The notes: a model not told the origin generated them from the letters alone. Counted from the stretch's first letter, positions 10,885 through 33,979 are shown. The stretch: DNA of 33,979 nt from Octopus bimaculoides (GCF_001194135.2 NC_068999.1:31324654-31358632), one strand, 5' to 3'. A program made the numbers and translations.

Positions 10885-10910
10885 TTTATTATTATTATTA
10901 TTATTATTAT

Positions 10911-11435: not shown

Positions 11436-11447
11436 AAATAAAATAAA

Positions 11448-14400: not shown

Positions 14401-15181
14401 GTTCCACATTATTTTGGGTTGAGTGGGGACTTTGCACAATCCACAGATCTGGTCAGTGGCCCTCAGCAGGTTATCCCATAGAAACCTCCAGTTGTCTTCC
14501 ACATCGTGTGAAGCTATGTCCCCTTCTATTTCGTCAAAGGCTTCAAGTAATACGTCTCTAAACCTGTCCATTCGCAGGATCTTTAAGCTTCCAGACCCTT
14601 CTCCTCCATGCTGGTTGTCTTCTGGGCATCCATTTAGCCCTGATCCTGAAGTCGCTAACTACTAGTCTATGTTGTGGGGTACATTCTTCACCTGGGAAGG
14701 TTTTGGCATCTATAAACAGCCATCTTTCCCTTTTTCTGGTGTGGATGTAGTCAATTTGGCTAGTGTGTCGGCCAGAATGGTAGGTGAATATGTGACTGGC
14801 AGTTTCCTGAAGTTAGTATTGCAAACCATAAGATCATTTGCATCGCAGAACTCCAGCAGCCTGGTTCCCCCCTCATTACAGGAACCAAAACCGTAGCCTC
14901 CATGTACGCCATGGAAGCCTCCTGCATGTTGTCCAACATGTCCATTGAAGTCACCAGCTACAAAGAGTAGGTCCCTGTTATTCATCAATGCGGTAGCCTG
15001 CAAGAGGGTGTCATAAAATCGGTTTTTTTGTCCATCAGATAGCCGTTGCTGAGATAATGGTTGCTAACCCATGATGGAGCACTAATCTAATCTTAGGTAT
15101 TCTATCGCATACTCTGACTACCTCGATTACCTTATCAACCCATTTCTCTGTAAGAAGTAAACCCACACCGCGACCCTGTCA
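11448..15181 (-). mobile_element. RTE-clade non-LTR retrotransposon, 5'-truncated in the APE domain, decayed
   Basis: APE motifs FVAGDFNGHVG and LLEFCDANDLMVCNT. RT motifs RGIKLLDQVMK, QFGFVSGKSTTDAIF, AFVDMEKAFDRV and LLYADDL. C-terminal RRLRWYGHVLRM and GRPRKTW. Long 3'UTR and (GAT)n tail. Contains a gap at 12617-13033. Confidence 0.95.
12617..13033. other. Assembly gap (N run) inside the RTE element
   Basis: Run of N. Confidence 1.
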
Positions 15182-15750
15182 AAACCACTGACAAATGGTA
15201 TAAACACCATTCTGAAGCTGTGACTGAAGGAGAAAATGTATCTATTCTCTGGGACTTCCCCATGCATACCGACAAAACTATAAAAGCTAATAAACCGGAT
15301 ATTATTATAAAAGATCAGACAAAGAAGAAGTGCTTATTAATTGACATGAGTATTCCTTGCGATCATAATATAGCGGCGAAAGAATTTGACAAGATCAGTA
15401 AATATAAAGACTTGCTAATAGAAATTGAAAAAATGTGGCACCTCAAGGTGACTACCGTACCAGTGATTGTAGGATCTCTAGGAATGATAAAAAAAGGTAC
15501 TACAAGAAGTGTAAAAAATCATGTTAACTGAAACGACTCATATACTGAGAAGAGCATTATCGCTGTGAAAACAACATCCATTCATGAATTTATTTATTTA
15601 TTAATTTTAAAAAAAATACATATTTTACCTGTGAATTTGCGTGTGTAAACTGGGAATGCATACAATGAGCTTCTCTGCCCTAGGTGTACGGAAAACACTC
15701 GGCAAGAAATGGAAGAAAATTTGAAGAAAGAAGAAAAATAAAAGCAACAT
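15177..15750 (+). mobile_element. 3' fragment of an R4/Dong-like LINE (restriction-like endonuclease domain plus 3'UTR)
   Basis: KWYKHH...ILWDFPMHTDKTIKANKPDIIIKD...CLLIDMSIP...KISKYKDL...VPVIVGSLGMI is a PD-(D/E)xK-type RLE domain. The element ends at (AAT)n. Confidence 0.9.
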
Positions 15751-15939
15751 AATAATAATAACATTGAAAAATACCTTAGGAATGAGAACCCAGGTTCGAA
15801 ATTTTCACCAAGACACCTGATGAAGGATGGAGGGTATATCAGCTGAAACATGTTAACAACAAACAAGATGAGGACAAATATCCGTCTAATGTAAATAATG
15901 TAAATAATGTACATAATTCCTCATCTCTTAAATGTAGAA
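15750..15939 (+). mobile_element. SINE-G (AAT)n tract and hammerhead-like tail, copy 1
   Basis: aataataacattgaaaaataccttaggaatgagaacccaggttcgaaatttt...acacCTGATGAaggatgg...tcagctGAAAC...gatgagga...tcctcatc is homologous to 29830-30094 and to the reverse complement of 26761-26924. Confidence 0.85.
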
Positions 15940-16161
15940 ATGTATTTATGCAACAGTTTTCCAATTACTTTCCAAAGTAGACAATAATATTACTGTAATT
16001 TGGTCAGCTTCTAGGAACCATAGATATATGACATCAGATCCCTTTTATCAATAGCTTTGAAAATGAATTTAGTTTCTTTCACTTGGGTCAACTTCTAAAT
16101 TGCAGCAGCCCACCTTTATCCACATACCTCACTGCATAAAGCATGCATGTGTGTACGCGTG

Positions 16162-16192
<31 letters not shown>

Positions 16193-16729
16193 GTGATTGT
16201 TTCCAGATTCCTTAGAGACCACAATTTCAAAGACCTGGGTATAAATATGTACAAGCTGGAACCCAAAGAGAAAGTGATACAAATATAAATAATTCCAATC
16301 ATGTTGAAATTAATTTGATTCAACTGCACCTATTTTCAGCCCTCTCAGAGAAGGATTAAACATCACTATGTGGAATTATTGAATCAAAAGAGGTTGATCA
16401 AAGATTTCTCTTCCATTTGACTGAAATGCTATTAACCATTGACCAAAATCAATAAAGTAACTTTGATTTTGATGACCATCAGACCAGAGGAAATGACGTG
16501 AATTATTTATGAAAAATTTGATAAAACCAGAAGTTCTATTGACATTTTCTGAAGTGGTAAGATTGGTAGGGATAGAAGATTATTTAGAATCATTTTATCT
16601 TGACAAGAATTTCTCTAAAACAAATTGAATTTATATTTAAATAATTGGTTTTGATAATTCTAAATGGTTCTAGAATTAAAATATCAATGTCAAAATATTT
16701 CTGTCATTTTATTTCTTTCAGAATATCTC

Positions 16730-16960
16730 TGCTACAATATCTTCCATTCCAGAATACTTATCACAGTAGCTCTGCCACCATATCTCTGTCACAGTATCTC
16801 AGTTACTATCACAGCAATAAAATATGTCTTACAATATCTGTGACACAGTATCTTTATCATAGTATCTCTATCACAGTATTTCTGTCATAGTATCTCTTGT
16901 GCAGTATCTTTGTCACATTATCTATGTCACACTATCTCTGCCACTTATCTCTATCATACT
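16730..16960. repeat. Degenerate minisatellite, unit approximately cacagtatctctgt
   Basis: Repeated tatctctgtcacag, atcacagtatctc variants. Confidence 0.75.
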
Positions 16961-16966
16961 ACCTCT

Positions 16967-17294
16967 GTTTCGATTCCCAAACCGGGCATTGTGAGTGTTT
17001 ATTGAGCGAAAACACCTAAAGCTCCACGAGGCTCCGGCAGGGGATGGTGACGAAACCTGCTGTACTCTTTCACCACAACTTTCTCTCACTCTTTCTTCCT
17101 GTTTCTGCTGTGCCTGTAATTCAAAGGGTCAGCCTTGTCACACTGTCACGCTGAATATCCCCGAGAACTACGTTAAGGGTACACATGTCTGTGGAGTGAT
17201 CAGCCACTTGCACGTTAATTTCACGAGCAGGCTGTTCCGTTGATCAGATCGACTGGAACCCTCGTCGTCGTAAGCGACGGAGTGCCAACAACAA
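16967..17294 (+). mobile_element. SINE family C, 5'-truncated at the B-box
   Basis: Starts with B-box-like ttcgattccc, is richer in GC/CpG than its flanks, and ends with hairpin cgtcg-tcgtaag-cgacg and a (CAA)n tail. Single copy in the window. Confidence 0.6.
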
Positions 17295-17729
17295 ACTACC
17301 TCTGTTACAGAATCTTTTTCTCAATATTTATGTCACAGAATCTTCGTCACATGAGTTCTGTGAAAGTATCCCCCCGTCAAAGAATATACTTTTTTAAAAT
17401 TAAAATTCTGTTTTATTTTTCTCACAAAACTAGTTACTTCCGTTTGTACCAGAATATGCAACTGATATCAGCTGAGCTAATGTGTTAGTGCTTTCTATGA
17501 CTTCTGGTTTTAAATCCTGGCTTTTATATTTATCATTATGAAAGCCTAGACTTAAAAGTGACATTTGGACCATCAAAATGCCAAGCAATTACTTTATATT
17601 GGAAAAGAACTCCATCAAATTTTGAATTAAATTACTGGAATTATATGCTATTTTCTTAAGAATATGGATTAGGGAGTTTTGTTATAACCAGAGAATTGGT
17701 TATAGCCAATGAATTCACAAGAATGTGAA

Positions 17730-18245
17730 AAGAGAATACATCTCCACTTGGTGCAGCAGAGTTTTGAAATGAACTGCCAGGCTACATAAAACTTGAAATG
17801 AGAGGGATATGGAAAAGAGAATACACTGTTTGCAAAACAAAAGTTTGAATAAGTTCTGGAGGAATGATTCACAAATCTGACTTGGTTATTTGAACTTAGT
17901 CCAAACAAACACTCCCAGGACCAATGTAGAGATTGCTCAAAATGTCTACCATGAACAACCTACATTACAGGAAACAAGTTAATATAACAACAGTACTCTC
18001 TAATATTCACACAAATTACTGCCTGCTGGTGTGCAGAATTATGCTACATGTGCAGTATTGAAAGATGTTATTGCACAAAGACTGGTACTTTTAACACCTG
18101 TACACTCACTTCTGTGTCTGGTTTGATGCCAAATCCACACATTGAATGAAACTATCTGCACTTGGTTATAACCTTATTGAACAAACTTACAGAAGAACCA
18201 ATTGGCACCATCTCAGAAGATGGGATAGAAACATTTAAATAATGA
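17730..18245 (+). pseudogene. Heavily decayed transposase relic, Transib/Chapaev (RAG1-related)-like
   Basis: Ordered fragments across frames: LHLVQQSFE, YIKLEMRGIW, ITGNKL, YCTKT, MPNPH..YLH and EEPIGTISEDGIETFK. These resemble the Transib motifs LHAWIRxFE, NDGN, YCxETA, MPxxVHxxLxH and PIGxLSEEAQE. Matched by eye only. Confidence 0.4.
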
Positions 18246-18844
18246 ATATACAAGCACCTATTATCAGCCTCAACTTTGATAATGTAATGAACCAATAATT
18301 GACTAGTTTGACCCTGCTTTGTGGTGAATTGTACTATGAGGTTACTGCTCCTAAGTACAAGAAATAAAAATATATAACACCTATTGTAATTATAGATTTA
18401 TTTTGTATCTATTTGCCATCACTAGAGTGGTTGTGTGATGTCAAGGTGCCGAAAGAAATATTAAACTCTCAATGATCTGTATGTAATTAGAAATACATCA
18501 GAACATTGAAATTTACAAATGACTTAGCAGTTTTTCTATCTAAAGTAAGCAAGAAATAATTATTCCATTTACTAATCAATCAATCCTTAATAATCTCAGT
18601 CATGATGTTTCCTTAGTTAACCCCCACAGTTACATGATTGGCTCCATTTTGATGTGGCTTATAGGACCTTCAATTTAGAGGTGAAGAAAGTGGAAGGTTT
18701 CAATGTTCAAATTTCTCCTAAATTGTTGGTGGAGGTTAATAAGTTGAGTTGTCTTCAAATATAAGTTTGAACTGTTTTATATTCTGCCTTTACCAGGAGG
18801 ACACATTTTGTACTACAGTATTCAACTAGTGTTCATAATCATGC

Positions 18845-19255
18845 CATTATTATAGGGAGAATATTGTTGTTATGAAAATCATATAAATGGTATAGAGATA
18901 TTGATATAGATATCATTATTATGGAAGTACTATTGTTATTATGGAGATAGTATTATCGTTCTGGGTATGATATTGTTGACCTAGACATAATATTACTTTT
19001 ATAGCAATAATATTGCTGTCATGGAAATACTGAAGTTGTTATAGATATAATATTGCAGTTATAGAAATAATATTACTAAGGAGTTAATATTATTGCTATG
19101 GCAATAATATTATTATTATAGAGATAAAATTGTTGTTATAGGGATAATATGGCTGTTGTGGAAATAATAATGTTTTAATAGTTTTGTTATGTAGATGATA
19201 TTCTAGTTATAGATAAAAATTGTTTTTAGGGATATAATATTGTTAGGGCATATCA
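18845..19255 (+). repeat. Degenerate 20-bp tandem array, unit approximately atattgttgttatggagata
   Basis: Units such as atattgttgttatgaaaatc and tattgttattatggagatag recur with about 20-bp periodicity. Confidence 0.8.
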
Positions 19256-19336
19256 TTGATGAGGTCGCAAATGACAATGAAAGGGCCATGACAATCTTAA
19301 TTGACTGATTGATTGACTGATCAATCAATCAAACAA

Positions 19337-20648
19337 TCATCATCATCATTGTTGTTTAACGTTTGCTTTCCATGCTAGCATGGGTTGGACAATTTGACTG
19401 AGGACTGGCAAACCAGATGGCTGCACCAGGCTCCAATCTGATCTGGCAGAGTTTCTACATCTGGATGCCCTTCCTAATGCCAACCACTCTGAGAGTGTAG
19501 TGGGTGCTTTTACGTGTCACCAGCACGAGGGTCAGTCAGGCGGTACTGGCAACGGCCACGCTCAAATGGTGTTTTTTACATGCCACCTGCACAAGAGCCA
19601 GTCCAGTGGCACTGGCAACAACCTCACTCGAGTATTTCTTTGTGCCACCAGCACAAGTGCTAGTAAGGCAATGCAGGTAACCATCACGCTCAAATGGTGC
19701 TTTCACACGCCGCCGGTACAGGAGCCAAACAGCTGATCTGGCTATGATCATGCTTGGATGGTGCTGTTAGCGCTCCACTGGCACGGTTGCCAGTCATCGA
19801 ATTTGGTTCAATTTAGATTTCACTTGCCCCGACAGGTCTTCGCAAGCAGAGTTTGGTGTCCAATAAAGGAAAGGTTGGCATGAGTGCCAGTCGTCGAGTT
19901 TGGTTCGATTTTGATTTTGATTTTGACTTCACTTGCCTCAACAGGCCTTCTCAAGCAGAGCTTTAGTGTCCAATGAAGGAGAGGTACGCATAAGTGGGCT
20001 GGCTACTCCCCTGGCAAAGGCCACGCGTTATAGTCTCACTTGGCTTGCCAGGTCTTCTCACGCACAACATATTTCCAAAGGTCTTGGTCACTGGTCATTG
20101 CCTCGGTGAGGCCTAATGTTCGAAGGTCGTGCTTCACCACTTAATCCCAGGTAGCCCTTGTTGAGAGGCATAGGCTGAGATAATGGTTGCTAACTCATGA
20201 TGGAACACTAATCTAATCTTAAGTATTCTATCGCATACTCTGACTACCTCGATTACCTTATCAACCCATTTCTCTGCAAGAAGTATACCCACGCCCCCAA
20301 CCCTGTCAGTGTTCCCTGCCCAGAAAGTCTTGTACCTATGTTCTTTGCCTGTGAGGAACCTAGCGGAACCTTGGAGGCAGCACAAATCTACACGTCTCCA
20401 TTCAAGCATCTCAACAATCTCACCAGACCTACATTTCAGTGTTCCCACATTGAGTGTGCCAACTCTGAGGGTGTGGGAGGTGTGGGTCCGTGAGACTCTG
20501 GGATGGGGGACAGCAGCATCATGTACCTGAAAAGAAAGCTTGCATTTGGCAGAATTCATAAACAAACAATAGCCTTCAACCTGCATACACTACACCATCA
20601 TTTATATGCACTATATGATCACTACCTTACATTGGAGATAAACCCTAA
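19337..20648 (-). mobile_element. RTE derivative with large internal deletion (5' APE start fused to ORF end and 3'UTR)
   Basis: (CAT)n tail and 3'UTR as at 11448-12340, then a jump at 20148-52 to the APE N-terminus LRVGTLNVGTL...EKWVDKVIEVVRVCDR...ISAYASQQGLP. Confidence 0.9.
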
Positions 20649-20744
20649 TTGTCAAATACTAGGGTTGATATAATAAAATATACTACATCAAGATCTGTAA
20701 TTTTGTGATCAATGCTACAAATCCAATATTCAAATAAAAAATTA

Positions 20745-21188
20745 TGTGTTCTCTGCCCAGAAAATCTTGTGTTCTTTGCATGTGAGGAACCTAGTGGGAC
20801 CTCCTCTCCATCTTACTTCTTGGAGGCAGCAGATATCGACATATTTCTGTTCAAGCATCTCAACAATCTCGCCAGACCTACCTTTCAGTGTGTCGACGTT
20901 AAGAGTGCCAACCCTGAGGGTGTGGGAGGTAAGGGCCCGTGAGACCCTGGGGCGAGGAACAGCGGCGTCATGTACCTGAAAAGAAAGCTTGCATTTGGCA
21001 GAATTCATAAACAAACAATAGCCTTCAATTCAACCTGCATACACTACACTATCATATATTTGCACTATATGATCACTATGTTACATAGGAGATAAACCCT
21101 AAGTATAGGTGGGGGTGGCGTAAAGCCTTTAGAAGTGTTCATGGGAGACAACCAAAGGATAGGAGAGGATAGAAACTTCTGGTGCAGG
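20745..21188 (-). mobile_element. Second RTE 5' fragment (5'UTR and APE start), tandem to the previous copy
   Basis: LRVGTLNVDTLKGRSGEIVEMLE...LQEVRWRG. Colinear with 20320-20648 and runs into the gap. Confidence 0.9.
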
Positions 21189-21573
21189 NNNNNNNNNNNN
21201 NNNNNNNNNNNNNNNNNNNNNNNNNNNNNNNNNNNNNNNNNNNNNNNNNNNNNNNNNNNNNNNNNNNNNNNNNNNNNNNNNNNNNNNNNNNNNNNNNNNN
21301 NNNNNNNNNNNNNNNNNNNNNNNNNNNNNNNNNNNNNNNNNNNNNNNNNNNNNNNNNNNNNNNNNNNNNNNNNNNNNNNNNNNNNNNNNNNNNNNNNNNN
21401 NNNNNNNNNNNNNNNNNNNNNNNNNNNNNNNNNNNNNNNNNNNNNNNNNNNNNNNNNNNNNNNNNNNNNNNNNNNNNNNNNNNNNNNNNNNNNNNNNNNN
21501 NNNNNNNNNNNNNNNNNNNNNNNNNNNNNNNNNNNNNNNNNNNNNNNNNNNNNNNNNNNNNNNNNNNNNNNNN
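21189..21573. other. Assembly gap (N run) followed by (GA)n
   Basis: Run of N. Confidence 1.
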
Positions 21574-21634
<61 letters not shown>

Positions 21635-22094
21635 TAGAGAAGGGATAGTGGTCAGAACATGAGGGAGAAAAATATTCTTTTGGGATTTGTGTAGCATAAT
21701 TTAACGAGACAGCAAATGTTGATAATAGTAAAATAGAACTGAAAAATCTGAGAGGTTTTGGTCAGCCAATCTATGACAAAATTAGAGAAATAAGTGACGG
21801 TTTCATAAACTTGAATAAATGAATGAATGAATGAATGTAATGACATGGTAATGAAATAGACAGAATAGTGAAAAGAACTAAGTAAGTGGTTATGATCTGC
21901 TCATAAATAGAAGGGTATGAACGAGGTTGAAAAGACAAAGACCTCTTATCTGAGCATCTTCTGAGATTGGGATTTCTTCAGCTGATTAATTGGTTAAATA
22001 ATTAACCAATTGACAAATAAACAATAACGAAGTGAAATAGAACCTGTGCATGAGTTTATTGTTAGCAGAAGGACTCTCCTGAGATGCAACATAA

Positions 22095-22650
22095 ACATAA
22101 TACTTTTATTATAGAGATAATATTGTTGTTTTGAAGATAACAATTGTTATTTTGGTGGTTAAAAAATATTATAGAGGTGATGATGTTGGTATAGAGTTAA
22201 TGTTGTTATAGAGATAATATTTTCTTTATGGAGAAAATACTATTTTTATGGAGTAGTTACAACAGTTAAAGTGCTAGTAATGTTTTTATACATATAATAC
22301 ATTTTGTTATGGAGGTAATATTGTTATATAGATATAGTATTATTGTTACAGTGATAATATTGTTGTTATAGAAATAATAGAGTGGTTATGGTGATAATAT
22401 TTTTGTTATTGTCATAGTGTTATTGTTATACAGATACTATTGCTAAAGACATATTTTTTTTTGCTATAGAGATATGTTGTCTTGGAAATAATATTAGCTA
22501 TTATTAAAGAGATAATGTTTTGTTATGGAGATAATGTTGTTGCTACTAATATAATATTATCATTTTGGAGCTAATATTGTTGTTATGGAGATGATATTGC
22601 TGTTAGCTGTCATTATAGTGAAAACTTTCCAGCAATAGAGATATTACTAG
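22095..22650 (+). repeat. Second degenerate 20-bp tandem array, same unit and orientation as 18845-19255
   Basis: Units such as ataatattgttgttatagaa and aatattgttgttatggagat. Confidence 0.8.
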
Positions 22651-22654
22651 GTCT

Positions 22655-22815
22655 ATAGAGATGATGTTGCATCTTTGTTTATAGCCTGTACAGCCCTTGC
22701 AAACCATTTTTCTGCATCATGTTTCTTTAGTGACCACCAAATTATTGAATATACCTTGTCAAACATTTCCAAATCAACAAAAGCCAAGAAGAGAGGTTTA
22801 AGCCAGGATATAATG
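22655..22815 (-). pseudogene. Old RTE reverse transcriptase fragment
   Basis: KPLFLAFVDLEMFDKVYSIIWWSLKKHDAEKWFARAVQAINKDATS aligns by eye with KPLYLAFVDMEKAFDRV...IWWSIRKQGIDKWLVRAVKAMYRDTDS at about 13480-13630. Confidence 0.8.
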
Positions 22816-23313
22816 GTCGTTTGGAACCCTTGAATGGAATCCTTGAAAGTTCTTAATGCAATAAAAGTGTTCCCTGAGGATCTGTTGTGGTTGAGCGTCA
22901 ATATGCATTTAGAACTTACATTGTAGGGTTTCAAACAACCATCTAGAAACTTTAATATATACCTACATTTATCCTTATTATTCCTACATTTGTTCAGTAA
23001 CTCATAACTGGTAACACTACTCAATATAATAGTTAATTAACAACTCTACAGAAAACAGACTGGATTATGAAAATCTTCTTGGACACATACTTTCTAATAT
23101 ATATATGCATATATATATAAATGGAGTTAAATGCAGGTGTTATTCAAATCTTTATATTTCTGACATATGTTTTGAAGAAAACATTGGTATTATTCCAGAA
23201 GGAATAAAATGATGTAAAACAATGCAATCTTCTCATCAGGGAAAGAAAGAGAAACATAACACATCAATAAGATAGTTTAACCAAATGTGATTACTACATA
23301 TATGATGAAGTTA

Positions 23314-23427
23314 TTTGGATTTCTATTCGCATACACAGCAACTCTTGCTGCTAACTGTAAACTAGAAATTAATTTTTTCAGCTTATCAAACTTTGATACA
23401 GGTAAATTTACAACCTTCTATATCAAC
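23314..23427 (+). repeat. Left arm of a 114-bp near-perfect inverted repeat (right arm 23993-24106)
   Basis: 113/114 identity to the reverse complement of 23993-24106 by direct comparison. Confidence 0.95.
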
Positions 23428-23669
23428 CTTCTATGGTAAGTTATTTTTTAAAAAAATCCGTTAATAGGTATAACGTCAAAGGCAATTTATAGAAAGAGAA
23501 GGAGGAAAAAAGAAATTAGCAGAAAACTAAAAGTGGAGAAATATAGTGTGATAGGTGAATAGAAATAAAGATTAAAGGTGTGGAAATAGATATATTTAGT
23601 GGAAGTGAAATGTAAGAAGACAGTTAAAGATCGAATTTTATAGACTGGTAGAAATCACTTATAGGAACT

Positions 23670-24106
23670 GAAGATATGTTTTTACCAATGTTTGCCATGG
23701 TAAACACATTCTTTAAATGTGTTTACAAGAGGATTCTCTGAGAGCAGGATGAAATACAGTTCATTATTACAGAGTGAACAAAAAGATTTGCATTTATCAT
23801 AAGGAAAAGATCTAGATAGAACATTCCATTCCAAATCAAATTGATTGTTATGTTCCTTTAGAGACCAAATTAATTTACTAAGCATATATATATACGTAAA
23901 GCTCAGATCCAAAGATTTAGGTATAGGAAGATAGTAAGCCCAAGCAGTCTGTAGAAGGTATAAAAAACAACTTTCAGGAACAATTGTGGTTTGTTGACAT
24001 AGAAGGTTGTAAATTTACCTGTATCAAAGTTTGATAAGCTGAAAAAATTAATTTCTAGTTTACAGTTAGCAGCAAGAGTTGCTGTGTATGCGAATAGAAA
24101 TCCAAA
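23670..24106 (-). mobile_element. Penelope-like element relic (GIY-YIG endonuclease C-terminal region)
   Basis: LSKLIWSLKEHNNQFDLEWNVLSRSFPYDKCKSFCSLCNNELYFIL...N...H resembles the PLE endonuclease tail LSKxIWxLK...W.IL...PY...CxLCxxEK..IL...LN...H. The upstream YTATL...FFSLS...FTTFYVN is a weak match to YxAT...YIGxT...FKxRYxNH. Confidence 0.7.
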
Positions 24107-24329
24107 ATTAGGGAATGGGGTAGATAAAATCCGGGCTACATATGTTTTATAGCTAACAGAACCTCAGAAGTAGTAATTATCCAGATGAGGGGTAATCTGC
24201 TAGCTACTTGCCAATCCAAAGATACATTAATCAAAAGAAGTTAACATTATCATCAAAGGATCCCATGTTGACTTGCAAGAAATTTGATTGAAAATGTATG
24301 TAAACATATGTACCCTGGATTACTACTTT

Positions 24330-24341
24330 ATTTATCATCAG

Positions 24342-24384
<43 letters not shown>

Positions 24385-24460
24385 TTCATCATCATCATCA
24401 TCAGCAGTAGCATTATCATCATTGTTTAACGTCCATGGGTTCTAAGCTGAATTTGCAGAG
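24330..24460 (-). repeat. (CAT)n microsatellite attached to a decayed RTE tail
   Basis: Long (CAT)n followed by gtttaacgtcc-atgggtt, the RTE terminal motif. Confidence 0.7.
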
Positions 24461-24944
24461 ATTTGTTAATTTAGATGGCTTCTTTAGATTAAGTCTACAT
24501 AAATGACAACATTTCCAGAATGCTATATTTCATGCTCTATTAAATAAGCATAATTATCAGTGTGTCAAAGATTTCTGTGTGAAATTCCTCTTCTGCAGGG
24601 AATATAGATAGTGCTGAAGAAGAGTTAACTGTAAGCTATCTGAGAGCCAGCTTTGATGCAATTTCTATTCTTGGCAGAAACTATTCCACATCACATATTC
24701 TGAAAATACTTTTTAAGAATGACATAACATGACAATATCCAATATCTATATAAGGTGTTTGTGCCTTGACAAAAGAAACCAATATTGATCAGAAGATATT
24801 TAAAGCTCTACCAATAACTTCAATGTCTTCATAACAATCTTTGTTCTATTTTTAACCTGTTTCACATGAAGCATTTGATGCAATCACCTACTTACACCAA
24901 TGTTCACTGTGCTATTTTTCAAAACACAGTTTTGGCATTGCTTT

Positions 24945-25160
24945 TGTTGTTGTTGTTGTTGTTTAGCTACATGTTAGTCCTGACTAAGCAGACCTGTGAT
25001 CAAAGGCATTCAATCCATGACCATCTTCATAATTCTTTCAGTCATTGCATATTTAAGAATAAATTATATATGTCCTTCCATTTTCAAGACAGTAAAGTAT
25101 AATTTGATGAAGATTTGGCTGCTATTTGTAGCAGGTGAAATGACCACATAGAGACTATTG
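24945..25160 (-). repeat. Dispersed repeat family F copy with (TTG)n end
   Basis: gatcaaaggcattcaatccatgacc and atttggctgctatt are reverse complements of motifs at 8345-8515. Confidence 0.55.
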
Positions 25161-26399
25161 TTTACTGAACTGTCTTACATAGAGACTATTGTTTTCTAAA
25201 CTGTCTTGTTTATCCAACTTTAAACTGTTATAACATTCTATAAATATGATTATTGATTCATTTATGATGCTCTATTGTCAGAGAAAATTTGTGCAACCAC
25301 ATTATACTCTTAAATACTTTATCTCTGAAATAGATATTTTAGTTGATCCATCTTGTGAATGTTTATCAAATAGATCCATCATATGGTTGACTAGACACAT
25401 CCAACCAATTGAGTTTTATATTGATTCAAGCTTTGATAATTCAGTTTCTCAGACATTCATAAAATTTGAATATTAAGAGGAGGACTAAAGAGATATAAAA
25501 AGTTAGGCACAGATAAGGTGAGAACTAAATATAAAGAAAGACTCAACCTGAAATAGATGAACAAGATAGTTTGATGAAGGTTAGGCTGTTTGCAAGTTTA
25601 CAATAGACTATCTCTGAAGTTGTTAAGATAGACATAGTCTCAAAATTTGATGTTAGTTCCTATGAAGCTAGACAGGTAGAGGACAAATAGCATATATATA
25701 GCTTAAATAAGAATAAACCAAGAGGCAAATTACACATATTAAGAAATATTCTGTTTTGTAGCTTACTTTAAACTGACTTGTTCTTTCAGTAATTTTATTC
25801 AGTAATAAGTTGTAACCAATAGTATGGAAGGTAGATTATGACCTAGAAGGAATAATATGATATTAACACTTACTAATCATACATGCACCTTTATGTGATG
25901 GCTGTTAGTTTTTTGGGGGATGTGAAGCTATATTTAAAGGAAAACATTACCTTCATTTGAGACCCATAACAAACTGTTTCCCCAGAAAATTCTGAAGTTA
26001 TTTATTAGCACAATAGAATTTTCTCTGTCCTTTGACCTGAATTAGTATGAATGATAGTTATAATGGATTTTGAATATGTATGTGGTAAGGTCCATATAGT
26101 TAGTTTTGATGCACTGTCACAACATTAAAAATGCTTTGTATATTACATTGAATTAATAAGTAGGGGAATATATGCAGTTAGAAGTTTGTTAGAATGGTTC
26201 AGTCTTAGTGTATGCTTTTGAGTGTAGTGTGTGATCTAGTGAATGATTTTATCATAACAAAACTACCTTTATTGTTGTATTTGTATATCAGTGAAAAATG
26301 TTGTATTACAACAAATAGAAATTTCATGACTATATCAGTGCTTACTATATCAGTGTTTAAAGATAGATTAGGCAAATCTACCTTCCATTTTGTGGTTTT

Positions 26400-26495
26400 T
26401 CAGTGTGTGCATGTGTGTGTGTGTGTGTGTGAGAGAGAGTGTGTCTGCGTGCATGTGCGTGCGTGCATGTGTGAGTGCATGCGTGTGCATGTGTG
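26400..26495. repeat. (GT)n/(GCAT)n-type microsatellite
   Basis: Visible tandem repeats. Confidence 0.85.
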
Positions 26496-26760
26496 AATAA
26501 GACTCAGTGCTCCTCGCTTACATCAAAGCTCTTCAGATAGAAATAATGCGTTTGTGAATATGGATATGTATTTGTTTGGATTAACGTTTGTGAATATGCA
26601 TTTCACATATGATGAAATCATACGGGACTCACTGCAAACATTTTCAAAATTATTACTCACATTCACTCTTTATTCACAAATTTATCTCAAGTTTGTATGG
26701 AGATTTAGGTTCAAGATATTAAAACAGCCAAAGATATCACTTAACTGAATATCAGAGCTA

Positions 26761-26924
26761 GTACATTATTTACATTAATTACATTTGACAGATATTTGTC
26801 CTCATCATTGTTAATACAACGTTTTGGCTCTTACACCCTCCAGCCTTCATCAGGTATCTTGGGGAAATTTCGAACCTGGATTCTCATTCCTAAGGTATTT
26901 TTCGATCTTATTATTATTATTATT
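26761..26924 (-). mobile_element. SINE-G tail (hammerhead-like), copy 2, separated from its head by the R4/Dong insertion
   Basis: Minus strand: (aat)n gatcgaaaaataccttaggaatgagaatccaggttcgaaatttccccaagATAC-CTGATGA-aGGCT..AGCC-aAAAC-GTT-GTAT. Confidence 0.85.
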
Positions 26925-29641
26925 TTATGTTTGGCTTTTGCTTTGCTTTAGTACAAGTTGACTCCAAGTCACACCCAGAGACTTCAAGAAACAACAAGTT
27001 AGAAGTTCATGTTGGTGGTATGCCTAGGGTGCCATATATTTGGTTTTGTACATAGTGTTGTTCTAGAGAATGTTTAAGAAACCATAAGAAAATTATGTGT
27101 TTGTTTTAAAATTTGAAATTACATAGAGAGTATTTTATGTAGGATATGAACACTATCTTTTGAATTTCTGCCATTTTGGAGTTTCCTGGTATCTGAGCTA
27201 GGTAGCAATCATCCCCTTTTGCTATCATTCCTATTACAACAGGTATTGTTTTAGTCTTCAGGTTCCACATTTTGCTAATTTCTATTTCAAGATCTTTATA
27301 CTTGCTCAGCTTTTGGTAGGTCTTGACAGATAAATTTATATCGATTGGGACAGTCATATCAATGAGGAGGCATGATTTTTGTCTGAAGTCTTTCAATATG
27401 ATATCTGGCCTATTTGCATCTATCTTTCTGTCAGTTTGATTGGTGAATTTCCAGAGGAATGAGATGTGACCATTTTCAAGCACTGGAGGTTGTTTGTGTT
27501 CCCACCAGTTTTTATCATGGGGCAAGTCCATGTTTTTGCAAATTACCCAGTGAATATATTGTGCAGTTCTATCATGCCTGTTGAGATATTCTGTAGGTGC
27601 TAGAAGACTGCACATGAAGACAACATGATCAATGGTTTCATTTTGTTGTTGACATACACGACATGTGGGGAAGCTGCGTTCTTTAATATGTTGGCCTGAT
27701 AGTTCCTTGTAGGTAGGCATTAATTTTGGGCTGCTATGATAAACCCTTTTGCTTCTGATTTTAAGCCAGAAACCATTAGCCATTGATGGGTAAGGGCTTT
27801 GTCAACATTGGCATTATTTGCTCTCTTTGGGTATTTACCATTGAGAGGTTTTTCTTGCCATTTATCAGTCAGAATATCTAAGGAAGCAGCTTTAGCATAG
27901 ATTTTCATGTGCTTAGCTTTTTCTGCGCTTGTTTCTAGTACGTCAAATTCTGGAATTTGTATTTGCAATTCACTTAGATATTCCTTTGTCTGTTTTGTTA
28001 CTAAGTATGATGCTTTCTTGTTTTCATGTTTTGAGACAAGTTTTAACATCCAGTCATTAGAGTTTTTCAGGTAGGTATCTAGGCCTATTATGACAATCTT
28101 CATTGTTAATGCCATTTGTAAAAGTTCCCAGCCTCCCTCTTTTCTTGACAGATAAAGTTGATCTATATCTGCCTTAGCGTGGTGCATTCTATGGATTTTC
28201 AACAGTTTTCGTATTTTCCTGTCAAGATTACATATTTCAGTAATCGACAAGTTAATGATATTGAAACCGTAAGTCAAGACTGGTATGGCTAAAGCATTGA
28301 TCACTTCAATCCTGTTTCTTGCATTCAGCCCTGTCTTGAGTATTGCTCTCACCCTGCGATAACATTCTCTTCTGATCCTTTCCCTCATCACTGAATGTTT
28401 GATTTCATCCCCTTCAATTAACCATAGGTATTTGTAGCTCTCCACTGGTTCTCTTTTATGACATTCTGCTGGTCAAGGTTAACATTAGATATTTCTGTCA
28501 TTTTTCCCTTGATAAAGGCAGCTTTTGCACATTTATCAAGGCCAAATTGCATCCTGATGTCATCACTGAATTGTTTGACTATTGATAGTAAGCCCTTGAG
28601 TTGCTGGTAATTTTTTGCAAAGAGCTTTAAATCATCCATGTAAATGAGATGATTTATATTTTTATCAAATATTTTATAACCGTACAGTGCATCATTGAGC
28701 AATTTTGAGAGAAGTATTAAGGCTAGACAAAAGAGGAGTGGTGATAGTGAGTCACTCTGGAAAATGCCACATGAGATTCTTATATCACCAGCCTTTAGAG
28801 ATTCATTGTCACTGTTCAAAGTCAGTGTGGTTCTCCATGATCTCATGCTTACAGACAAAAGGTTTCGCAGAGTAGGAGCTATTTTATACATTTCCAGACA
28901 TTTTTTAATCCAGCTATGTGGTAGGTTAGCAAAAGCTTTTTTATAGTCTTTGCAGGCTATTGACAAGTTTTTGTGTTGTTTGTGACAATCTTCTAAGATC
29001 ATTTTATTGATGAGTAACTGATCATTACAACCATAAGATCCACATTTACATCCTTTTTGCTCATTAGGGAATATGCTACTTCCTATTAAAAAACTATAGG
29101 TATATTCAGTCAGGACAGATGTTAGTATTTTATACATTGTTGTTAAGCAGGTTATTGGTCGATAATTTTTTGGTTCATTTATTTCTTCATTTTGTGTAAG
29201 TAGGAATGTTAAACCATTAACTAGTCAAGAGGGAATCATACTTGGATGTTGCAAAACATTGTTGTAAAGTTTTGTTAACAGCTCATGGCTCTCTGGGAAG
29301 GCATTCAACCAGAAGTTAGGAATTTTATCCTTTCCTGGAGACTTCCATTTGCTTGACCTCCTGAGAGCAGATCTTATATTTTCTACCTTGATATCCTCCC
29401 ACTTTTGCTTCTCTTAGGAATCTAAGTCTGTAGATATTCTATCAATCCAAGGGGACTTTTCATTGTGTGTTTTTTATTCTGCCCAAATTTTATTCCAAAA
29501 TTCTTGCACTTCTTTTGATGGGACAGACTTTATTGTAACTGGTATTTTCTCTATCTTCCTGTAAAAACTTCTGGGGTTATTTTTGAACATGTTGTCCTTG
29601 AAGAATCTAACGTGCTTTTCATACCGTGCTATTCAGGCAAC
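26925..29641 (-). mobile_element. R4/Dong-like non-LTR retrotransposon (RT, CCHC finger, RLE), 5'-truncated, flanked on both sides by (TAA)n
   Basis: RT motifs EQKGCKCGSYGCNDQLLI, DYKKAF, GIFQSDSLSPLLF and YMDDLKL. C-x2-C-x7-H-x4-C in CRVCQQQNETIDHVVFMC, then RHD. RLE RPDIILKD...LIDMTVP...KYKDL. Frameshifts present. (TTA)n at 26908-26924 and 29643-29735. Confidence 0.95.
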
Positions 29642-29642
<1 letters not shown>

Positions 29643-29716
<74 letters not shown>

Positions 29717-29798
29717 CATTATTATTATTATTATTCAGGTCACTGCCTGGAATTGAATTCGGAATCTTGGGGTTAGCAGCCCGCGCTCTTAACCCCAA
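29643..29798 (-). mobile_element. SINE-G head (tRNA-like) and (AAT)n tract, copy 2
   Basis: Minus strand ggttaagagcgcgggctgctaaccccaagattccgaattcaattccaggcagtgacctgaataataat has a tRNA-like 3' half with a B-box-like motif. Confidence 0.75.
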
Positions 29799-29844
29799 GA
29801 TTCTGAGTTTGATTCCAAGCAGTGACCTGAATAATAATAATAAC

Positions 29845-29898
<54 letters not shown>

Positions 29899-30094
29899 CA
29901 TGATAATAATAATAACATCGAAAAATACCTTAGGAATGAGAATCCATGTTCGAAATTTCCCCAAGATATCTGATGAAGGCTGGAGGGTATATCAGCTGAA
30001 ACGTGTTAACAACAAACAATATGAGGACAAATATCTGCCAAATGTAAGTAATGTAAATAATGTACATAATTCCTCATCTCTTAAATATAGAACT
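29790..30094 (+). mobile_element. SINE-G copy 3: partial head, (AAT)n and hammerhead-like tail
   Basis: taaccccaagattctgagtttgattccaagcagtgacctga (aat)n aacatcgaaaaataccttagg...CTGATGAaggctg...cagctGAAACgtgtt...tcctcatctcttaaatatagaa. Confidence 0.85.
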
Positions 30095-30770
30095 GTATTA
30101 TCAGAGCTAGTCTCTGGTAACTGCCATGAGGAAAAATTGTATTGGACCATTTTCATATGTCTGAAAATTCATGTCTTGCTGATTCAAATGTATGGTCAAT
30201 AGACTCAACTATGTTCACTGAGTAATTATCTTGGGATCCTCATTTGTCTGGATCAGGTGCACTCCCTTACACTATTGCCAAATATTCAACCACTGACCAG
30301 GTAGCAACCATTGAAAATCTCATTAACGTTCTTAAATCCTTTAACTTTTAAAACCTTTTCATCATTTTTTTGTCCCCCAAAAAATGGAGCCAGAAAGATT
30401 TTTAAATGTTAATGGACTTAGAAAATTTATTGCTTCAAATTAAGCATAAAAGACTCATAAAGAAATATGAAAACATCACTAATAGAAAAAGATCAACAAA
30501 CTATGAAGAGTCCTTCAGGAGGTGCCATTTTTTCTTTTCTTTTTTTTATGTTTATTTTTCACATCAATAGCAAAAATGTGTTTACATTCTATATTTACAC
30601 ACAATCTTTTGCCGCTTAGATTTTATTTAATTTCTTCTGGCTTATGCCGTGTTGTGCATTACACATGAATGCATGCACTCATGCACATCATTTGTACCTT
30701 ATTCATTGTTAGGCTTTAAAATATCACATACATGCTAGCAAATATGTTTTTCACTATAACTAATTTATTT

Positions 30771-33025: not shown

Positions 33026-33670
33026 GATATAAATGTCTGTTAACTCAGTTGTCAACAAAATATTTGACAATATGTAGTTACATCTTTTTATGATCTTTTG
33101 TTACATCCCTCTACAGTTTCAGCTCATTATTGTATGTAGTTTTATCTCTTTATGTTATATGCTTGTATCTATACACTGACACACACATACATATGTAAAA
33201 AAGTGGACCAGAAAACACAACATGTTATCAAAAGGTTTGGGCACAGCAGGTGAGTTCTACACCTGCACTCATATGCTCTACACTACACTCTACAATACAT
33301 AAGTTCTACACTACACTCAATATGGTTTCATAACAATTTTGATAACTTCACTTAAGCTAGTGGAAAAGGAACATAGAAAACTTAACTGGTATTTTATCTT
33401 TATATAATGCACACGTTTCATAAATATAAGCCTGTTAATTACATAAGCCTGTATCCCCTATTATACAATACAATGCAGCTGGGCAAATCATGATACAAAG
33501 ATGCAAGCCCTTATATACACAAGTGTGCAAATAAGTATAGTTAGAATTGAATAAAGGAAAAAGGAAGTGAAGGGGTAAGCAAATATGCATAAATATGATA
33601 CAGGGTGAAGAGGAGAGAGGAAGAGACAGCAACAAAAGTAACAACAACAACATAACAATAATAATAATAA

Positions 33671-33886
33671 TCCTTTCTGTTATAAGCACAAGGCCTGAAA
33701 TTTTGGGGTAATGGGCAAGTCTACTACATTGATCTCAGTGCATAACTGGTTCTTATTTCATCTAACCTCAAAGGATAAAAGGCAAAGTCGACGACTTCGA
33801 TTGAATTGGAACTAAGAATGTAAGGATGGATGAAATGCCATTAAGCACTTTGCCTGACATGCTAATGATTCTGCCAGCTTGCCACC

Positions 33887-33888
<2 letters not shown>
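33671..33888 (-). mobile_element. tRNA-derived SINE family E embedded in an (AAT)n tract
   Basis: Minus head aaggtggcaagctggcagaatcattagc...tagttccaattc, central tttgccttttatcctttgagg...aaataagaaccagt. (AAT)n on both sides. Confidence 0.75.

Positions 33889-33979
<91 letters not shown>
33889..33979. repeat. (AAT)n microsatellite running to the window end
   Basis: Perfect trinucleotide run. Confidence 0.98.

What the first reader, a model, noticed from the sequence alone, without database searches (positions are those of the whole stretch)
15177..29735. R4/Dong-like LINEs insert into the (TAA)n tract inside SINE-G: a mobile landing pad
Seen: the 2.7-kb element at 26925-29641 splits SINE-G copy 2 exactly within its (AAT)n, with the head at 29736-29798, the tail at 26761-26907 and the same orientation. 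A second R4-like 3' end (15177-15750) also ends at the (AAT)n of copy 1 in the same orientation. The two LINEs have clearly different RLE sequences (ILWDFPMHTDKTIKANKPD vs FLWKFTNQTDRKIDANRPD) and unrelated 3'UTRs, which argues for independent insertions. Established: Dong of the R4 clade targets TAA repeats. Inference: the SINE spreads target sites for a site-specific LINE, and could supply an upstream Pol III promoter and a downstream self-cleaving ribozyme that define the LINE transcript ends. This would be a three-part SINE, LINE and ribozyme dependency.
Basis: partly seen in the sequence, partly recalled or inferred. Interest (0 to 1): 0.8.

Follow-up and report, generated by a model that had tools for sequence, protein, structure and literature searches.

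The report
Dong-like LINEs nested in SINE microsatellite
In this octopus genome window, two dead copies of a jumping gene that always lands in TAA repeats sit in the TAA repeat carried inside a short mobile element; this is ordinary nesting of mobile DNA, and the proposed promoter-and-ribozyme partnership has no support.

Summary
The window is octopus DNA: the best protein match is Octopus bimaculoides at 83% identity. The structural core of the finding holds. LINE2 (26925-29643, minus strand) has a reverse transcriptase, a zinc knuckle and a restriction-like endonuclease. It has TAA repeats on both sides and lies between a SINE-G head piece and a tail. LINE1 (15182-15749) comes from a different family (55% amino-acid identity) and ends at (TAA)4 followed by a SINE-G tail. 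Relatives in a sea star, a shrimp and a third assembly also end in (TAA)n, so these are Dong-like, TAA-specific LINEs.

- The "head" is a 95-nt near-perfect hairpin. On its other side lies a second (AAT)29 tract and tail.
- A 13-bp direct repeat (TATCAGAGCTAGT) flanks the whole of 26763-30098. "Copy 2" and the intact copy are therefore the two arms of one inverted-dimer SINE-G insertion at a non-TAA site, and LINE2 hit one arm later.
- Both LINEs are 5'-truncated and dead.

No hammerhead, tRNA or Pol III signal was found, and the LINE sense strand is full of T-runs. Shared orientation follows from TAA strand polarity. Enrichment over other TAA tracts cannot be tested in one window. This is ordinary nested insertion and of low interest.

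The parts
15182..15749 (+). LINE1: 3'-terminal 570 bp of a Dong-like LINE. It holds the end of the restriction-like endonuclease domain, a stop at 15529-15531, and a 3'UTR at 15532-15749. It is 5'-truncated, and its 5' side abuts another truncated LINE.
   Evidence: 55% aa identity to the LINE2 C-terminus. The homology of the neighbouring LINE ends at 15181. Sequence read.
15750..15761 (+). (TAA)4 between the LINE1 3' end and SINE-G tail c1
15762..15946 (+). SINE-G tail, copy c1
   Evidence: blastn and alignment with c2 and c3. The O. bimaculoides peptide P0121 is a translation of a fourth copy.
26750..26762 (.). Left target-site duplication, TATCAGAGCTAGT
   Evidence: Its 12-base core ATCAGAGCTAGT occurs only at 26751 and 30100 in the window; the preceding T also matches at both sites, read from the flanks printed.
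26763..26907 (-). SINE-G tail c2, the inverted arm. At its own 3' end it is 34 nt shorter than c1 and c3, and the duplicated target abuts it directly.
26908..26924 (-). About (TAA)6 on the minus strand, between the LINE2 3' end and tail c2
26925..29643 (-). LINE2: 2.7-kb 5'-truncated, frame-broken Dong-like LINE. Parts: pre-RT region, RVT_1 (28418-29137), CCHC knuckle and PD..D..K endonuclease (27106-27783), 3'UTR (26925-27105).
   Evidence: Pfam RVT_1 at 1.4e-16. Best PDB matches are R2 proteins. A profile of the C-terminus matches the R2 CCHC and endonuclease region at E = 0.002. Frame analysis.
29644..29735 (-). (TAA)31 on the minus strand, upstream of the LINE2 5' junction. It is the rest of the left-arm microsatellite.
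   Evidence: TRF
29736..29782 (-). Left arm of the head hairpin: 47 nt of the SINE-G head in minus orientation
29783..29830 (+). Right arm of the head hairpin: 47-48 nt of the SINE-G head in plus orientation
29830..29915 (+). (AAT)29, the uninterrupted internal microsatellite of the plus-strand arm
   Evidence: TRF
29916..30098 (+). SINE-G tail c3, the direct arm with a complete 3' end
30099..30111 (.). Right target-site duplication, TATCAGAGCTAGT

Best explanation
This is a nested cluster of dead retrotransposons in an octopus genome.

Step 1. A short non-coding retroposon (SINE-G: head, internal (TAA)n of about 30 units, 185-nt tail) inserted once at a non-TAA site. It made a 13-bp target-site duplication. 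Its 5' half is an inverted copy of its 3' half. The likely cause is snap-back or twin-priming-like template switching during target-primed reverse transcription. This made the 95-nt head hairpin and two mirror-image TAA tracts.

Step 2. A Dong-like LINE later inserted a 5'-truncated 2.7-kb copy into the left TAA tract. Its endonuclease and its TAA-ending RNA target (TAA)n/(TTA)n DNA. A second Dong-like family did the same next to another SINE-G tail at 15.7 kb.

The SINE is a landing pad only in the passive sense. It is moved by some other LINE and carries a long TAA microsatellite, which any TAA-specific element can use. Nothing suggests that the SINE supplies a promoter or a ribozyme to the LINE.

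Shown directly: the element boundaries, the duplicated target, TAA on both sides of LINE2, the domain content, and the TAA ends of relatives. Inferred: the snap-back mechanism, the order of events, and the passive nature of the relation.
For: - Octopus origin: the best hit of the LINE2 C-terminus is O. bimaculoides A0A0L8FXY1 at 83%.
- RT plus CCHC plus PD..D..K endonuclease homologous to R2 proteins.
- TAA on both sides of LINE2.
- Relatives end in TAA. In Asterias amurensis the layout is (AAT)36 / 1.2-kb truncated LINE / (TAA)73. In an ENA contig it is (TAA)15 / 4.2-kb LINE / degenerate (AAT)24. In Penaeus chinensis (AAT)23 starts 36 nt after the stop codon.
- Literature: Dong elements target TAA in a moth, a mosquito and a snail (PMC3812793). 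Dong-R4 is abundant and recently active in Octopus vulgaris (PMC13282606).
- The 13-bp direct repeat brackets 26763-30098, and its 12-base core occurs nowhere else in the window.
- With LINE2 removed, the left half is collinear with the right half, with about 37 versus 29 TAA units.
- In the first 76 tail columns c2 and c3 differ at 3 sites, against 9 sites for c1 and c3. c2 and c3 also share states that differ from c1 and P0121.
- The truncated left end abuts the duplicated target directly. That fits reverse transcription and does not fit cut-and-paste transposition.
Against: - Overall the two arms are less alike (tails 88%, head arms 83%) than c1 and c3 (about 90-92%). This is mainly due to a cluster of changes in c2 (alignment columns 140-170). 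If the arms were born identical, that cluster needs a separate explanation.
- Only one head exists in the window, and no other genomic copy could be fetched. The full SINE-G 5' end is therefore unknown.
- LINE1 shows only a 3' junction. A chimeric read-through retrocopy (LINE 3' end, TAA, tail) cannot be excluded for that locus.
- Placement in the R4/Dong clade rests on behaviour and domains, not on a tree with reference sequences.
Confidence: 0.78

Rival explanations
1. One reading: a functional three-part dependency. The SINE-G head supplies an upstream Pol III promoter, the tail supplies a downstream hammerhead ribozyme, and together they define the ends of the LINE transcript.
For: A CUGAUGA...GAAAC string is present in tails c1 and c3. 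A B-box-like GGTTCGAAAT lies in the tail, and T-arm-like strings lie in the head arms (seen by eye). The LINE and the SINE share orientation.
Against: - Rfam gives no hammerhead or tRNA hit at the gathering threshold or at E<=10 on c3 and c1. ARAGORN finds nothing.
- Stem II has only 2 contiguous base pairs from the core, and no stem I or III of at least 3 bp exists in type I or type III topology.
- c2 has CAAAAC where GAAAC is needed.
- The tail RNA folds no better than shuffled sequence (z = +1.6).
- The LINE2 sense strand has 11 T>=4 runs, and a full-length relative has 14. These are Pol III terminators by established knowledge.
- Both LINE copies are 5'-truncated, and the head is truncated to 47 nt.
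- Dong defines its 5' end with its own HDV-like ribozyme (PMC3774820).
- The shared orientation is forced by TAA polarity.
Confidence: 0.03
2. Shared-tail model: the (TAA)n and tail are the true 3' end of these LINEs. SINE-G is then their non-autonomous partner with a common tail, and nothing inserted into the SINE.
For: Both LINE 3' ends are followed by (TAA)n and the same tail at the same base. SINE and LINE partners sharing a tail is a classic arrangement.
Against: - LINE2 has TAA on both sides, and no TAA follows the tail.
- The LINE proteins are only 55% identical and the 3'UTRs are unrelated, yet the tails are 85% identical at the DNA level.
- Relatives in other phyla end at (TAA)n with no such tail.
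- The duplicated target brackets the SINE-G dimer, not LINE2 plus the tail.
Confidence: 0.05
3. The mirror structure at 26763-30098 is a foldback or MITE-type DNA transposon with long terminal inverted repeats (tail plus TAA). It is not a retroposon dimer.
For: There is a large imperfect palindrome of about 330 bp per arm with a flanking direct repeat. Copy c1 cannot exclude this model, because its upstream side is disrupted.
Against: - The ends are asymmetric. The left terminus is 34 nt shorter, yet it abuts the duplicated target directly.
- 13 bp is long for a duplication made by a cut-and-paste transposon (own knowledge).
- No transposase-related sequence is present.
- The arm divergence pattern fits an old single event equally well, so it does not discriminate between the models.
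Confidence: 0.1
4. The palindrome is an assembly artefact of a draft genome.
For: The window has four N gaps and many simple repeats.
Against: The arms differ by 10-17%. LINE2 is present in only one arm. The TAA unit counts differ. Unique duplicated target sequence flanks the structure.
Confidence: 0.03

Closest known systems
Dong (R4 clade) non-LTR retrotransposons of Bombyx mori, Anopheles gambiae and Biomphalaria glabrata, and the Dong-R4 families annotated in octopus genomes
   Same: Single RT-containing ORF followed by a CCHC knuckle and a restriction-like endonuclease. Insertion into (TAA)n with TAA on the sense strand on both sides. Frequent 5' truncation. Abundant in Octopus (PMC3812793; PMC13282606; PMC9115989).
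   Different: No tree with Dong or R4 reference sequences was made here. The 5' HDV-like ribozyme known for Dong (PMC3774820) cannot be checked, because both copies lack their 5' ends. Two families only 55% identical occur in one window.
Tx1L LINE inserting into Tx1D, a non-autonomous piggyBac transposon of Xenopus laevis
   Same: A target-specific LINE whose target sequence travels on another mobile element, which gives composite elements (PMC4494074).
   Different: Tx1L recognises a sequence specific to Tx1D. Here the target is a generic microsatellite that also exists outside the SINE, and relatives use plain TAA tracts in other phyla. The link to the SINE is therefore incidental.
L1 5' inversion by twin priming, and snap-back synthesis by non-LTR reverse transcriptases (own knowledge)
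   Same: One insertion bracketed by one target-site duplication, with its 5' part inverted relative to its 3' part.
   Different: Classical twin priming joins different parts of the RNA. Here the inverted part repeats the same part (head piece, TAA, tail) and makes a true inverted dimer. The mechanism is inferred only.
SINEs with internal microsatellites, for example the (CA)n inside Haliotis MESC SINEs
   Same: A simple repeat inside a SINE body that expands (PMC4758252).
   Different: In that case no site-specific LINE is known to use the repeat.

Membership tests
Dong / R4-clade non-LTR retrotransposon | Reverse transcriptase domain of non-LTR type | tested here: met
   RVT_1 at 1.4e-16 on 28418-29137. 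The best solved-structure matches are R2 retrotransposon proteins at 9e-13.
Dong / R4-clade non-LTR retrotransposon | C-terminal CCHC zinc knuckle plus PD-(D/E)XK restriction-like endonuclease, with no APE domain | tested here: met
   The alignment shows C-x2-C...H-x4-C, then NRPDI...LIDM...SKYKDLEIE. The profile matches the R2 knuckle and endonuclease region at E = 0.002. The N-terminal part is missing, so absence of an APE domain is not directly shown.
Dong / R4-clade non-LTR retrotransposon | Insertion into (TAA)n with TAA on the sense strand on both sides | tested here: met
   LINE2: (TAA)31 at the 5' side and about (TAA)6 at the 3' side. LINE1: 3' side only. Relatives in Asterias, Penaeus and an ENA contig. 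In Styela only a short degenerate remnant.
Dong / R4-clade non-LTR retrotransposon | Phylogenetic placement with the Dong (L08889) and R4 (U29445) reference proteins | not tested
   No reference sequences were available in the tools. The classification rests on target, domains and the published Dong-R4 annotation of octopus repeats (PMC13282606; PMC9115989).
Dong / R4-clade non-LTR retrotransposon | 5' HDV-like self-cleaving ribozyme at the TAA/element junction | not testable with these tools
   Both window copies are 5'-truncated. The 5' end of the full-length relative L004 gave no Rfam hit. This is inconclusive, because these ribozymes are hard to detect by sequence models.
SINE (Pol III-transcribed, LINE-mobilised short retroposon) | Short, non-coding, dispersed in many copies | tested here: met
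   Three tails in the window, plus a fourth copy elsewhere in O. bimaculoides seen as peptide P0121.
SINE (Pol III-transcribed, LINE-mobilised short retroposon) | Target-site duplication of variable sequence flanking the insertion | tested here: met
   The 13-bp TATCAGAGCTAGT at 26750-26762 and 30099-30111. None was found for c1, whose upstream side is disrupted.
SINE (Pol III-transcribed, LINE-mobilised short retroposon) | Head derived from tRNA, 7SL or 5S with A and B boxes | tested here: inconclusive
   ARAGORN finds nothing. Rfam gives no tRNA hit at E<=10. Only 47 nt of the head is present per arm. It looks like the 3' half of a tRNA by eye only.
SINE (Pol III-transcribed, LINE-mobilised short retroposon) | 3' tail shared with a partner LINE | tested here: not met
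   No other sequence in the window matches the tail 3' end. The partner may simply lie outside the window.
Hammerhead ribozyme | Conserved core CUGANGA ... GAAA | tested here: inconclusive
   Present in c1 and c3. c2 has CAAAAC instead of GAAAC.
Hammerhead ribozyme | Three helices (I, II, III) around the core with a UH cleavage site | tested here: not met
   The descriptor scan found 2 contiguous bp for stem II and no stem I or III of at least 3 bp in type I or III topology. Rfam gave no hammerhead hit at E<=10.
Tx1L/Tx1D-type composite (LINE specific for another mobile element) | The target sequence is carried by a mobile element | tested here: met
   The SINE-G unit, including (TAA)n, inserted at a non-TAA site with a duplicated target.
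Tx1L/Tx1D-type composite (LINE specific for another mobile element) | The LINE is restricted to copies of that element | tested here: not met
   Relatives sit in plain TAA tracts with no SINE-G in other phyla. In this window the test has no power: 2 events among about 5 tracts.

The most novel reading that the evidence does not exclude
SINEs that carry TAA tracts may seed most of the long (TAA)n tracts in octopus genomes and so steer where Dong-R4 LINEs accumulate. Two kinds are seen here: SINE-G, moved by a non-Dong LINE and carrying an internal tract, and TAA-tailed SINEs such as the one at 33678-33886. This would be a measurable cross-family dependency (LINE A moves a SINE that supplies the target for LINE B), possibly with a positive feedback in which each Dong-type insertion adds a new TAA target. 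The stronger version, with a SINE promoter and a tail ribozyme shaping LINE transcripts, is nearly excluded.
Probability: 0.2. Interest if true: 0.45.

Novelty: new member of a known kind. Interest (0 to 1): 0.2.

Why it matters
If the weak form holds genome-wide, it would help explain why Dong-R4 LINEs and SINEs are both so abundant in octopus genomes. It would also give a clean case of one retrotransposon family shaping the target landscape of another. As it stands, the locus is an ordinary nested insertion. Its main practical value is for annotation:
- The head hairpin is the junction of an inverted SINE dimer, not a promoter.
- The tail motif is not a ribozyme.
- LINE2 and LINE1 are dead fragments.

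Tried and rejected
- **Fetching other genomic copies of SINE-G failed.** Exact-protein look-ups for the window ORF and for O. bimaculoides P0001 were not on record. P0051 gave only 1.1-kb Logan contigs that stop before the LINE 3' end. DNA pattern scans of the viral and metagenome collections gave 0 matches. Searching the protein database with translated tail sequence found one peptide, P0121. Searching with translated head sequence found nothing.
- **Hammerhead.** Rfam at the gathering threshold and at E<=10, plus my own stem scan, were all negative.
- **HDV-like ribozyme** at the 5' end of the full-length relative L004: no Rfam hit, which is inconclusive.
- **Target-site duplication for c1, and for the neighbouring truncated LINE.** Nothing convincing was found.
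- **Similarity of the head to the tail, or to the TAA-tailed SINE at 33678-33886.** Only a 9-nt CCCCAAGAT string is shared, which is not significant.
- **MITE inserted into a single TAA tract as an explanation for the head.** Rejected, because the left flank is (TTA)n and the right flank is (AAT)n on the same strand. The flanks are therefore inverted, not directly duplicated.
- **In-window enrichment test.** It has no power: (3/5)^2 is about 0.36.

Full report
**Source and setting.** The window is AT-rich (35.6% GC), rich in simple repeats and has four N gaps. The C-terminal ORF of the 2.7-kb element matches an Octopus bimaculoides protein best, at 83% identity. Other hits of 45-57% identity carry an organism name from a source in four cases: a tunicate (Styela clava), a coral (Montipora capricornis), a sea star (Asterias amurensis) and a shrimp (Penaeus chinensis). 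The window is therefore octopus DNA.

**The assembly gap.** N 21189-21573 lies between unique sequence and an (AG)n run. It is more than 5 kb from the LINE1/c1 junction (15182-15946) and from the LINE2 block (26750-30111). No ORF or repeat of the claim spans it. Continuity across it cannot be shown from the window. Only the statement that the two loci are neighbours depends on it.

**What the observation gets right.**
- The SINE-G tail occurs three times: 15762-15946 (+), 29916-30098 (+) and 26763-26907 (-). Identity is 85-92%. Each copy starts at the same base directly after a TAA run.
- A fourth copy exists elsewhere in O. bimaculoides. The 51-aa "protein" A0A0L8FV75 is a translation of the tail.
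- LINE2 (26925-29643, minus) has an RVT_1 domain (1.4e-16). Its closest solved relatives are R2 retrotransposon proteins.
- The LINE2 C-terminus has a C-x2-C...H-x4-C knuckle followed by NRPDI...LIDM...SKYKDLEIE. As a profile, this region matches the knuckle and restriction-like endonuclease of R2 (E = 0.002).
- On its sense strand LINE2 has (TAA)31 upstream and about (TAA)6 downstream, followed by the tail.
- LINE1 (15182-15749, plus) is the last 570 bp of a related element. It is 55% identical in protein, and its 3'UTR is unrelated. It ends at (TAA)4 and then tail c1.
- The two LINEs are therefore independent insertions from different families.

**Are they Dong-like?** I fetched four relatives of the C-terminal domain from other animals.

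| Locus | Source | Upstream | LINE | Downstream |
|---|---|---|---|---|
| L005 | Asterias amurensis | (AAT)36 | 1.2 kb, 5'-truncated | (TAA)73 |
| L004 | ENA assembly contig | (TAA)15 | about 4.2 kb | degenerate (AAT)24 |
| L006 | Penaeus chinensis | not examined | C-terminal ORF | (AAT)23, starting 36 nt after the stop |
| L007 | Styela clava | none | C-terminal ORF | short degenerate TAA remnant |

TAA specificity is thus a property of this LINE lineage across phyla. The literature says the same of Dong:
- Dong elements target TAA microsatellites in Bombyx, Anopheles and the snail Biomphalaria (PMC3812793).
- Dong-R4 is one of the most recently active LINE groups in Octopus vulgaris, with 5 families and 1129 recent insertions totalling 4.7 Mb, or about 4.2 kb each (PMC13282606).
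- A full-length Dong is in the O. bimaculoides repeat library (PMC9115989).

I did not make a tree with reference sequences, so clade membership rests on domains, target and published annotation.

- The "head" exists only once (29736-29830) and is a near-palindrome. It is 83% identical to its own reverse complement and folds into a 45-bp hairpin (-70.7 kcal/mol, z = -14).
- To its right lie (AAT)29 and an intact plus-strand tail. To its left lie (TTA)31, LINE2, (TTA)6 and the minus-strand tail. The left flank is (TTA)n and the right flank is (AAT)n on the same strand, so the symmetry continues outward.
- With LINE2 removed, the left half aligns collinearly with the right half, with about 37 versus 29 TAA units.
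- The decisive detail is the 13-bp string TATCAGAGCTAGT at 26750-26762 and 30099-30111. It directly abuts the two outer ends. Its 12-base core ATCAGAGCTAGT occurs nowhere else in the window; the preceding T also matches at both sites (read from the flanks printed).
- Given the base composition, a specific 13-mer match has a probability of about 2e-8. Even allowing about 400 position pairs, this is about 1e-5.

This is a target-site duplication around the entire 3.3-kb block. "Copy 2" and the intact copy are therefore the two arms of one SINE-G insertion whose 5' part is an inverted copy of its 3' part. Supporting points:
- The left tail stops 34 nt short of the end shared by c1, c3 and P0121, yet it abuts the duplicated target. 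That fits 5' variability in target-primed reverse transcription. It does not fit a cut-and-paste element, which needs two equal ends.
- In the first 76 tail columns c2 and c3 differ at 3 sites, against 9 for c1 and c3. They also share several states that differ from c1 and P0121.
- A cluster of c2-specific changes (alignment columns 140-170) lowers the overall arm identity to 88%. I cannot explain this cluster.
- Snap-back or twin-priming-like synthesis is my inference for how the dimer formed.

**Consequences for the interpretation.**
1. Both arms contain head piece, (TAA)n and tail in the same order, and the unit landed in a non-TAA site. The TAA tract is therefore internal to a mobile unit, and that unit is moved by some LINE other than Dong. 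In this passive sense the "mobile landing pad" is real and is shown by the sequence.
2. LINE2 is in only one arm, so it arrived after the dimer formed.
3. LINE2's coding homology starts right at its 5' junction (ARYEKHVRFF...). Its frame is broken into at least three pieces with stops. LINE1 is a 570-bp stump. Neither copy can say anything about transcription of a functional LINE.
4. "Same orientation" is not independent evidence. A Dong-type LINE always has TAA on its sense strand, and SINE-G has TAA on its own sense strand, so the orientation is fixed.
5. Enrichment cannot be judged here. The window holds about five independent TAA tracts: the three SINE-G tracts, (TTA)9 at 10886, and the tract around 33659-33979. 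Two events falling in SINE-G tracts has a chance probability of about 0.36.

**Ribozyme and promoter.**
- Rfam finds nothing in the window at gathering thresholds. It finds no hammerhead or tRNA even at E<=10 around c3 or c1. ARAGORN finds no tRNA.
- Around the CUGAUGA...GAAAC string, stem II has only 2 contiguous base pairs from the core. No stem I or III of at least 3 bp exists in type I or III topology.
- c2 has CAAAAC in place of GAAAC.
- The tail RNA folds no better than shuffled sequence (z = +1.6).
- The LINE2 sense strand has 11 runs of T>=4, the first at nt 77. The full-length relative L004 has 14. By established knowledge of Pol III termination, a SINE promoter could not transcribe such a LINE.
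- Dong is known to be co-transcribed and to free its 5' end with its own HDV-like ribozyme at the TAA junction (PMC3774820). I could not test that here, because the copies are truncated. The 5' end of L004 gave no Rfam hit, which is inconclusive.

**LINE1 locus.** Its 5' side abuts a 5'-truncated LINE on the minus strand (11437-15181), not TAA. No further Dong-like sequence lies beyond that element, and I found no duplicated target for c1. The simplest reading is insertion into a SINE-G TAA tract followed by a later rearrangement. A read-through retrocopy (LINE 3' end, TAA, tail) is not excluded.

**Comparison with what is known.**
- The elements behave like Dong.
- The relation to the SINE resembles Tx1L inserting into the mobile Tx1D element of Xenopus (PMC4494074). 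The difference is that the target here is a generic microsatellite, which relatives also use outside any SINE.
- Internal microsatellites in SINEs are known, for example (CA)n in Haliotis MESC SINEs (PMC4758252).
- I found no paper describing this particular octopus arrangement. It follows directly from known properties.

**Verdict.** The nesting interpretation is supported. The functional three-part dependency is not supported. This is a new member of a known kind, and interest is low (0.2).

Noticed in passing
33659-33979: Another SINE-like element (33678-33886, plus strand; starts CCTTTCTGTTATAAGCACAAGGCCTGAAATTTTGGGG, ends GCCAGCTTGCCACC). It is preceded by about (TAA)5 and followed by (TAA)31 or more, running off the window end. 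TAA on both sides and a TAA tail suggest that a Dong-type LINE mobilised it. Such SINEs would be a further, perhaps larger, source of TAA tracts. It shows no similarity to SINE-G.
   Followed up: partly
29736-29830: Outside the hairpin apex, all six differences between the two head arms are transitions, so the RNA hairpin keeps pairing through G-U. With six sites this could be chance (about 0.05). It could also reflect selection on, or editing of, a double-stranded RNA.
   Followed up: no
11437-15181 (minus), also 19323-21102: A 5'-truncated non-LTR retrotransposon of another type. It has a weak RVT_1 hit and an endonuclease-like N-terminal region, and N gap 12617-13033 lies inside it. It abuts LINE1. 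Related fragments, including a tandem pair of N-terminal pieces (20309-20648 and 20746-21102, 82% identical), lie just left of gap 21189-21573. Its clade was not determined.
   Followed up: partly
23314-23427 and 23993-24106: Two 114-bp inverted repeats, 99% identical, about 565 bp apart. They look like the ends of a young non-autonomous DNA transposon. No clear target duplication was seen.
   Followed up: partly
18898-19244 and 22097-22605: Two related arrays of a degenerate 20-bp tandem repeat (ATAATATTGTTGTTATAGAG-like), 66-73% alike.
   Followed up: no
4969-5740 (minus): ORF fragments that look like a Tc1/mariner transposase (for example ...HDNACPHIPQATVQKLQSLNYEILQYPPYSPDISPTDH...). Seen in the ORF list only.
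   Followed up: no
26763-26907, alignment columns 140-170: Tail c2 carries a dense cluster of substitutions and a 3-nt deletion in the stretch that holds the supposed hammerhead core. The rest of c2 is nearly identical to c3. The cause is unexplained.
   Followed up: no
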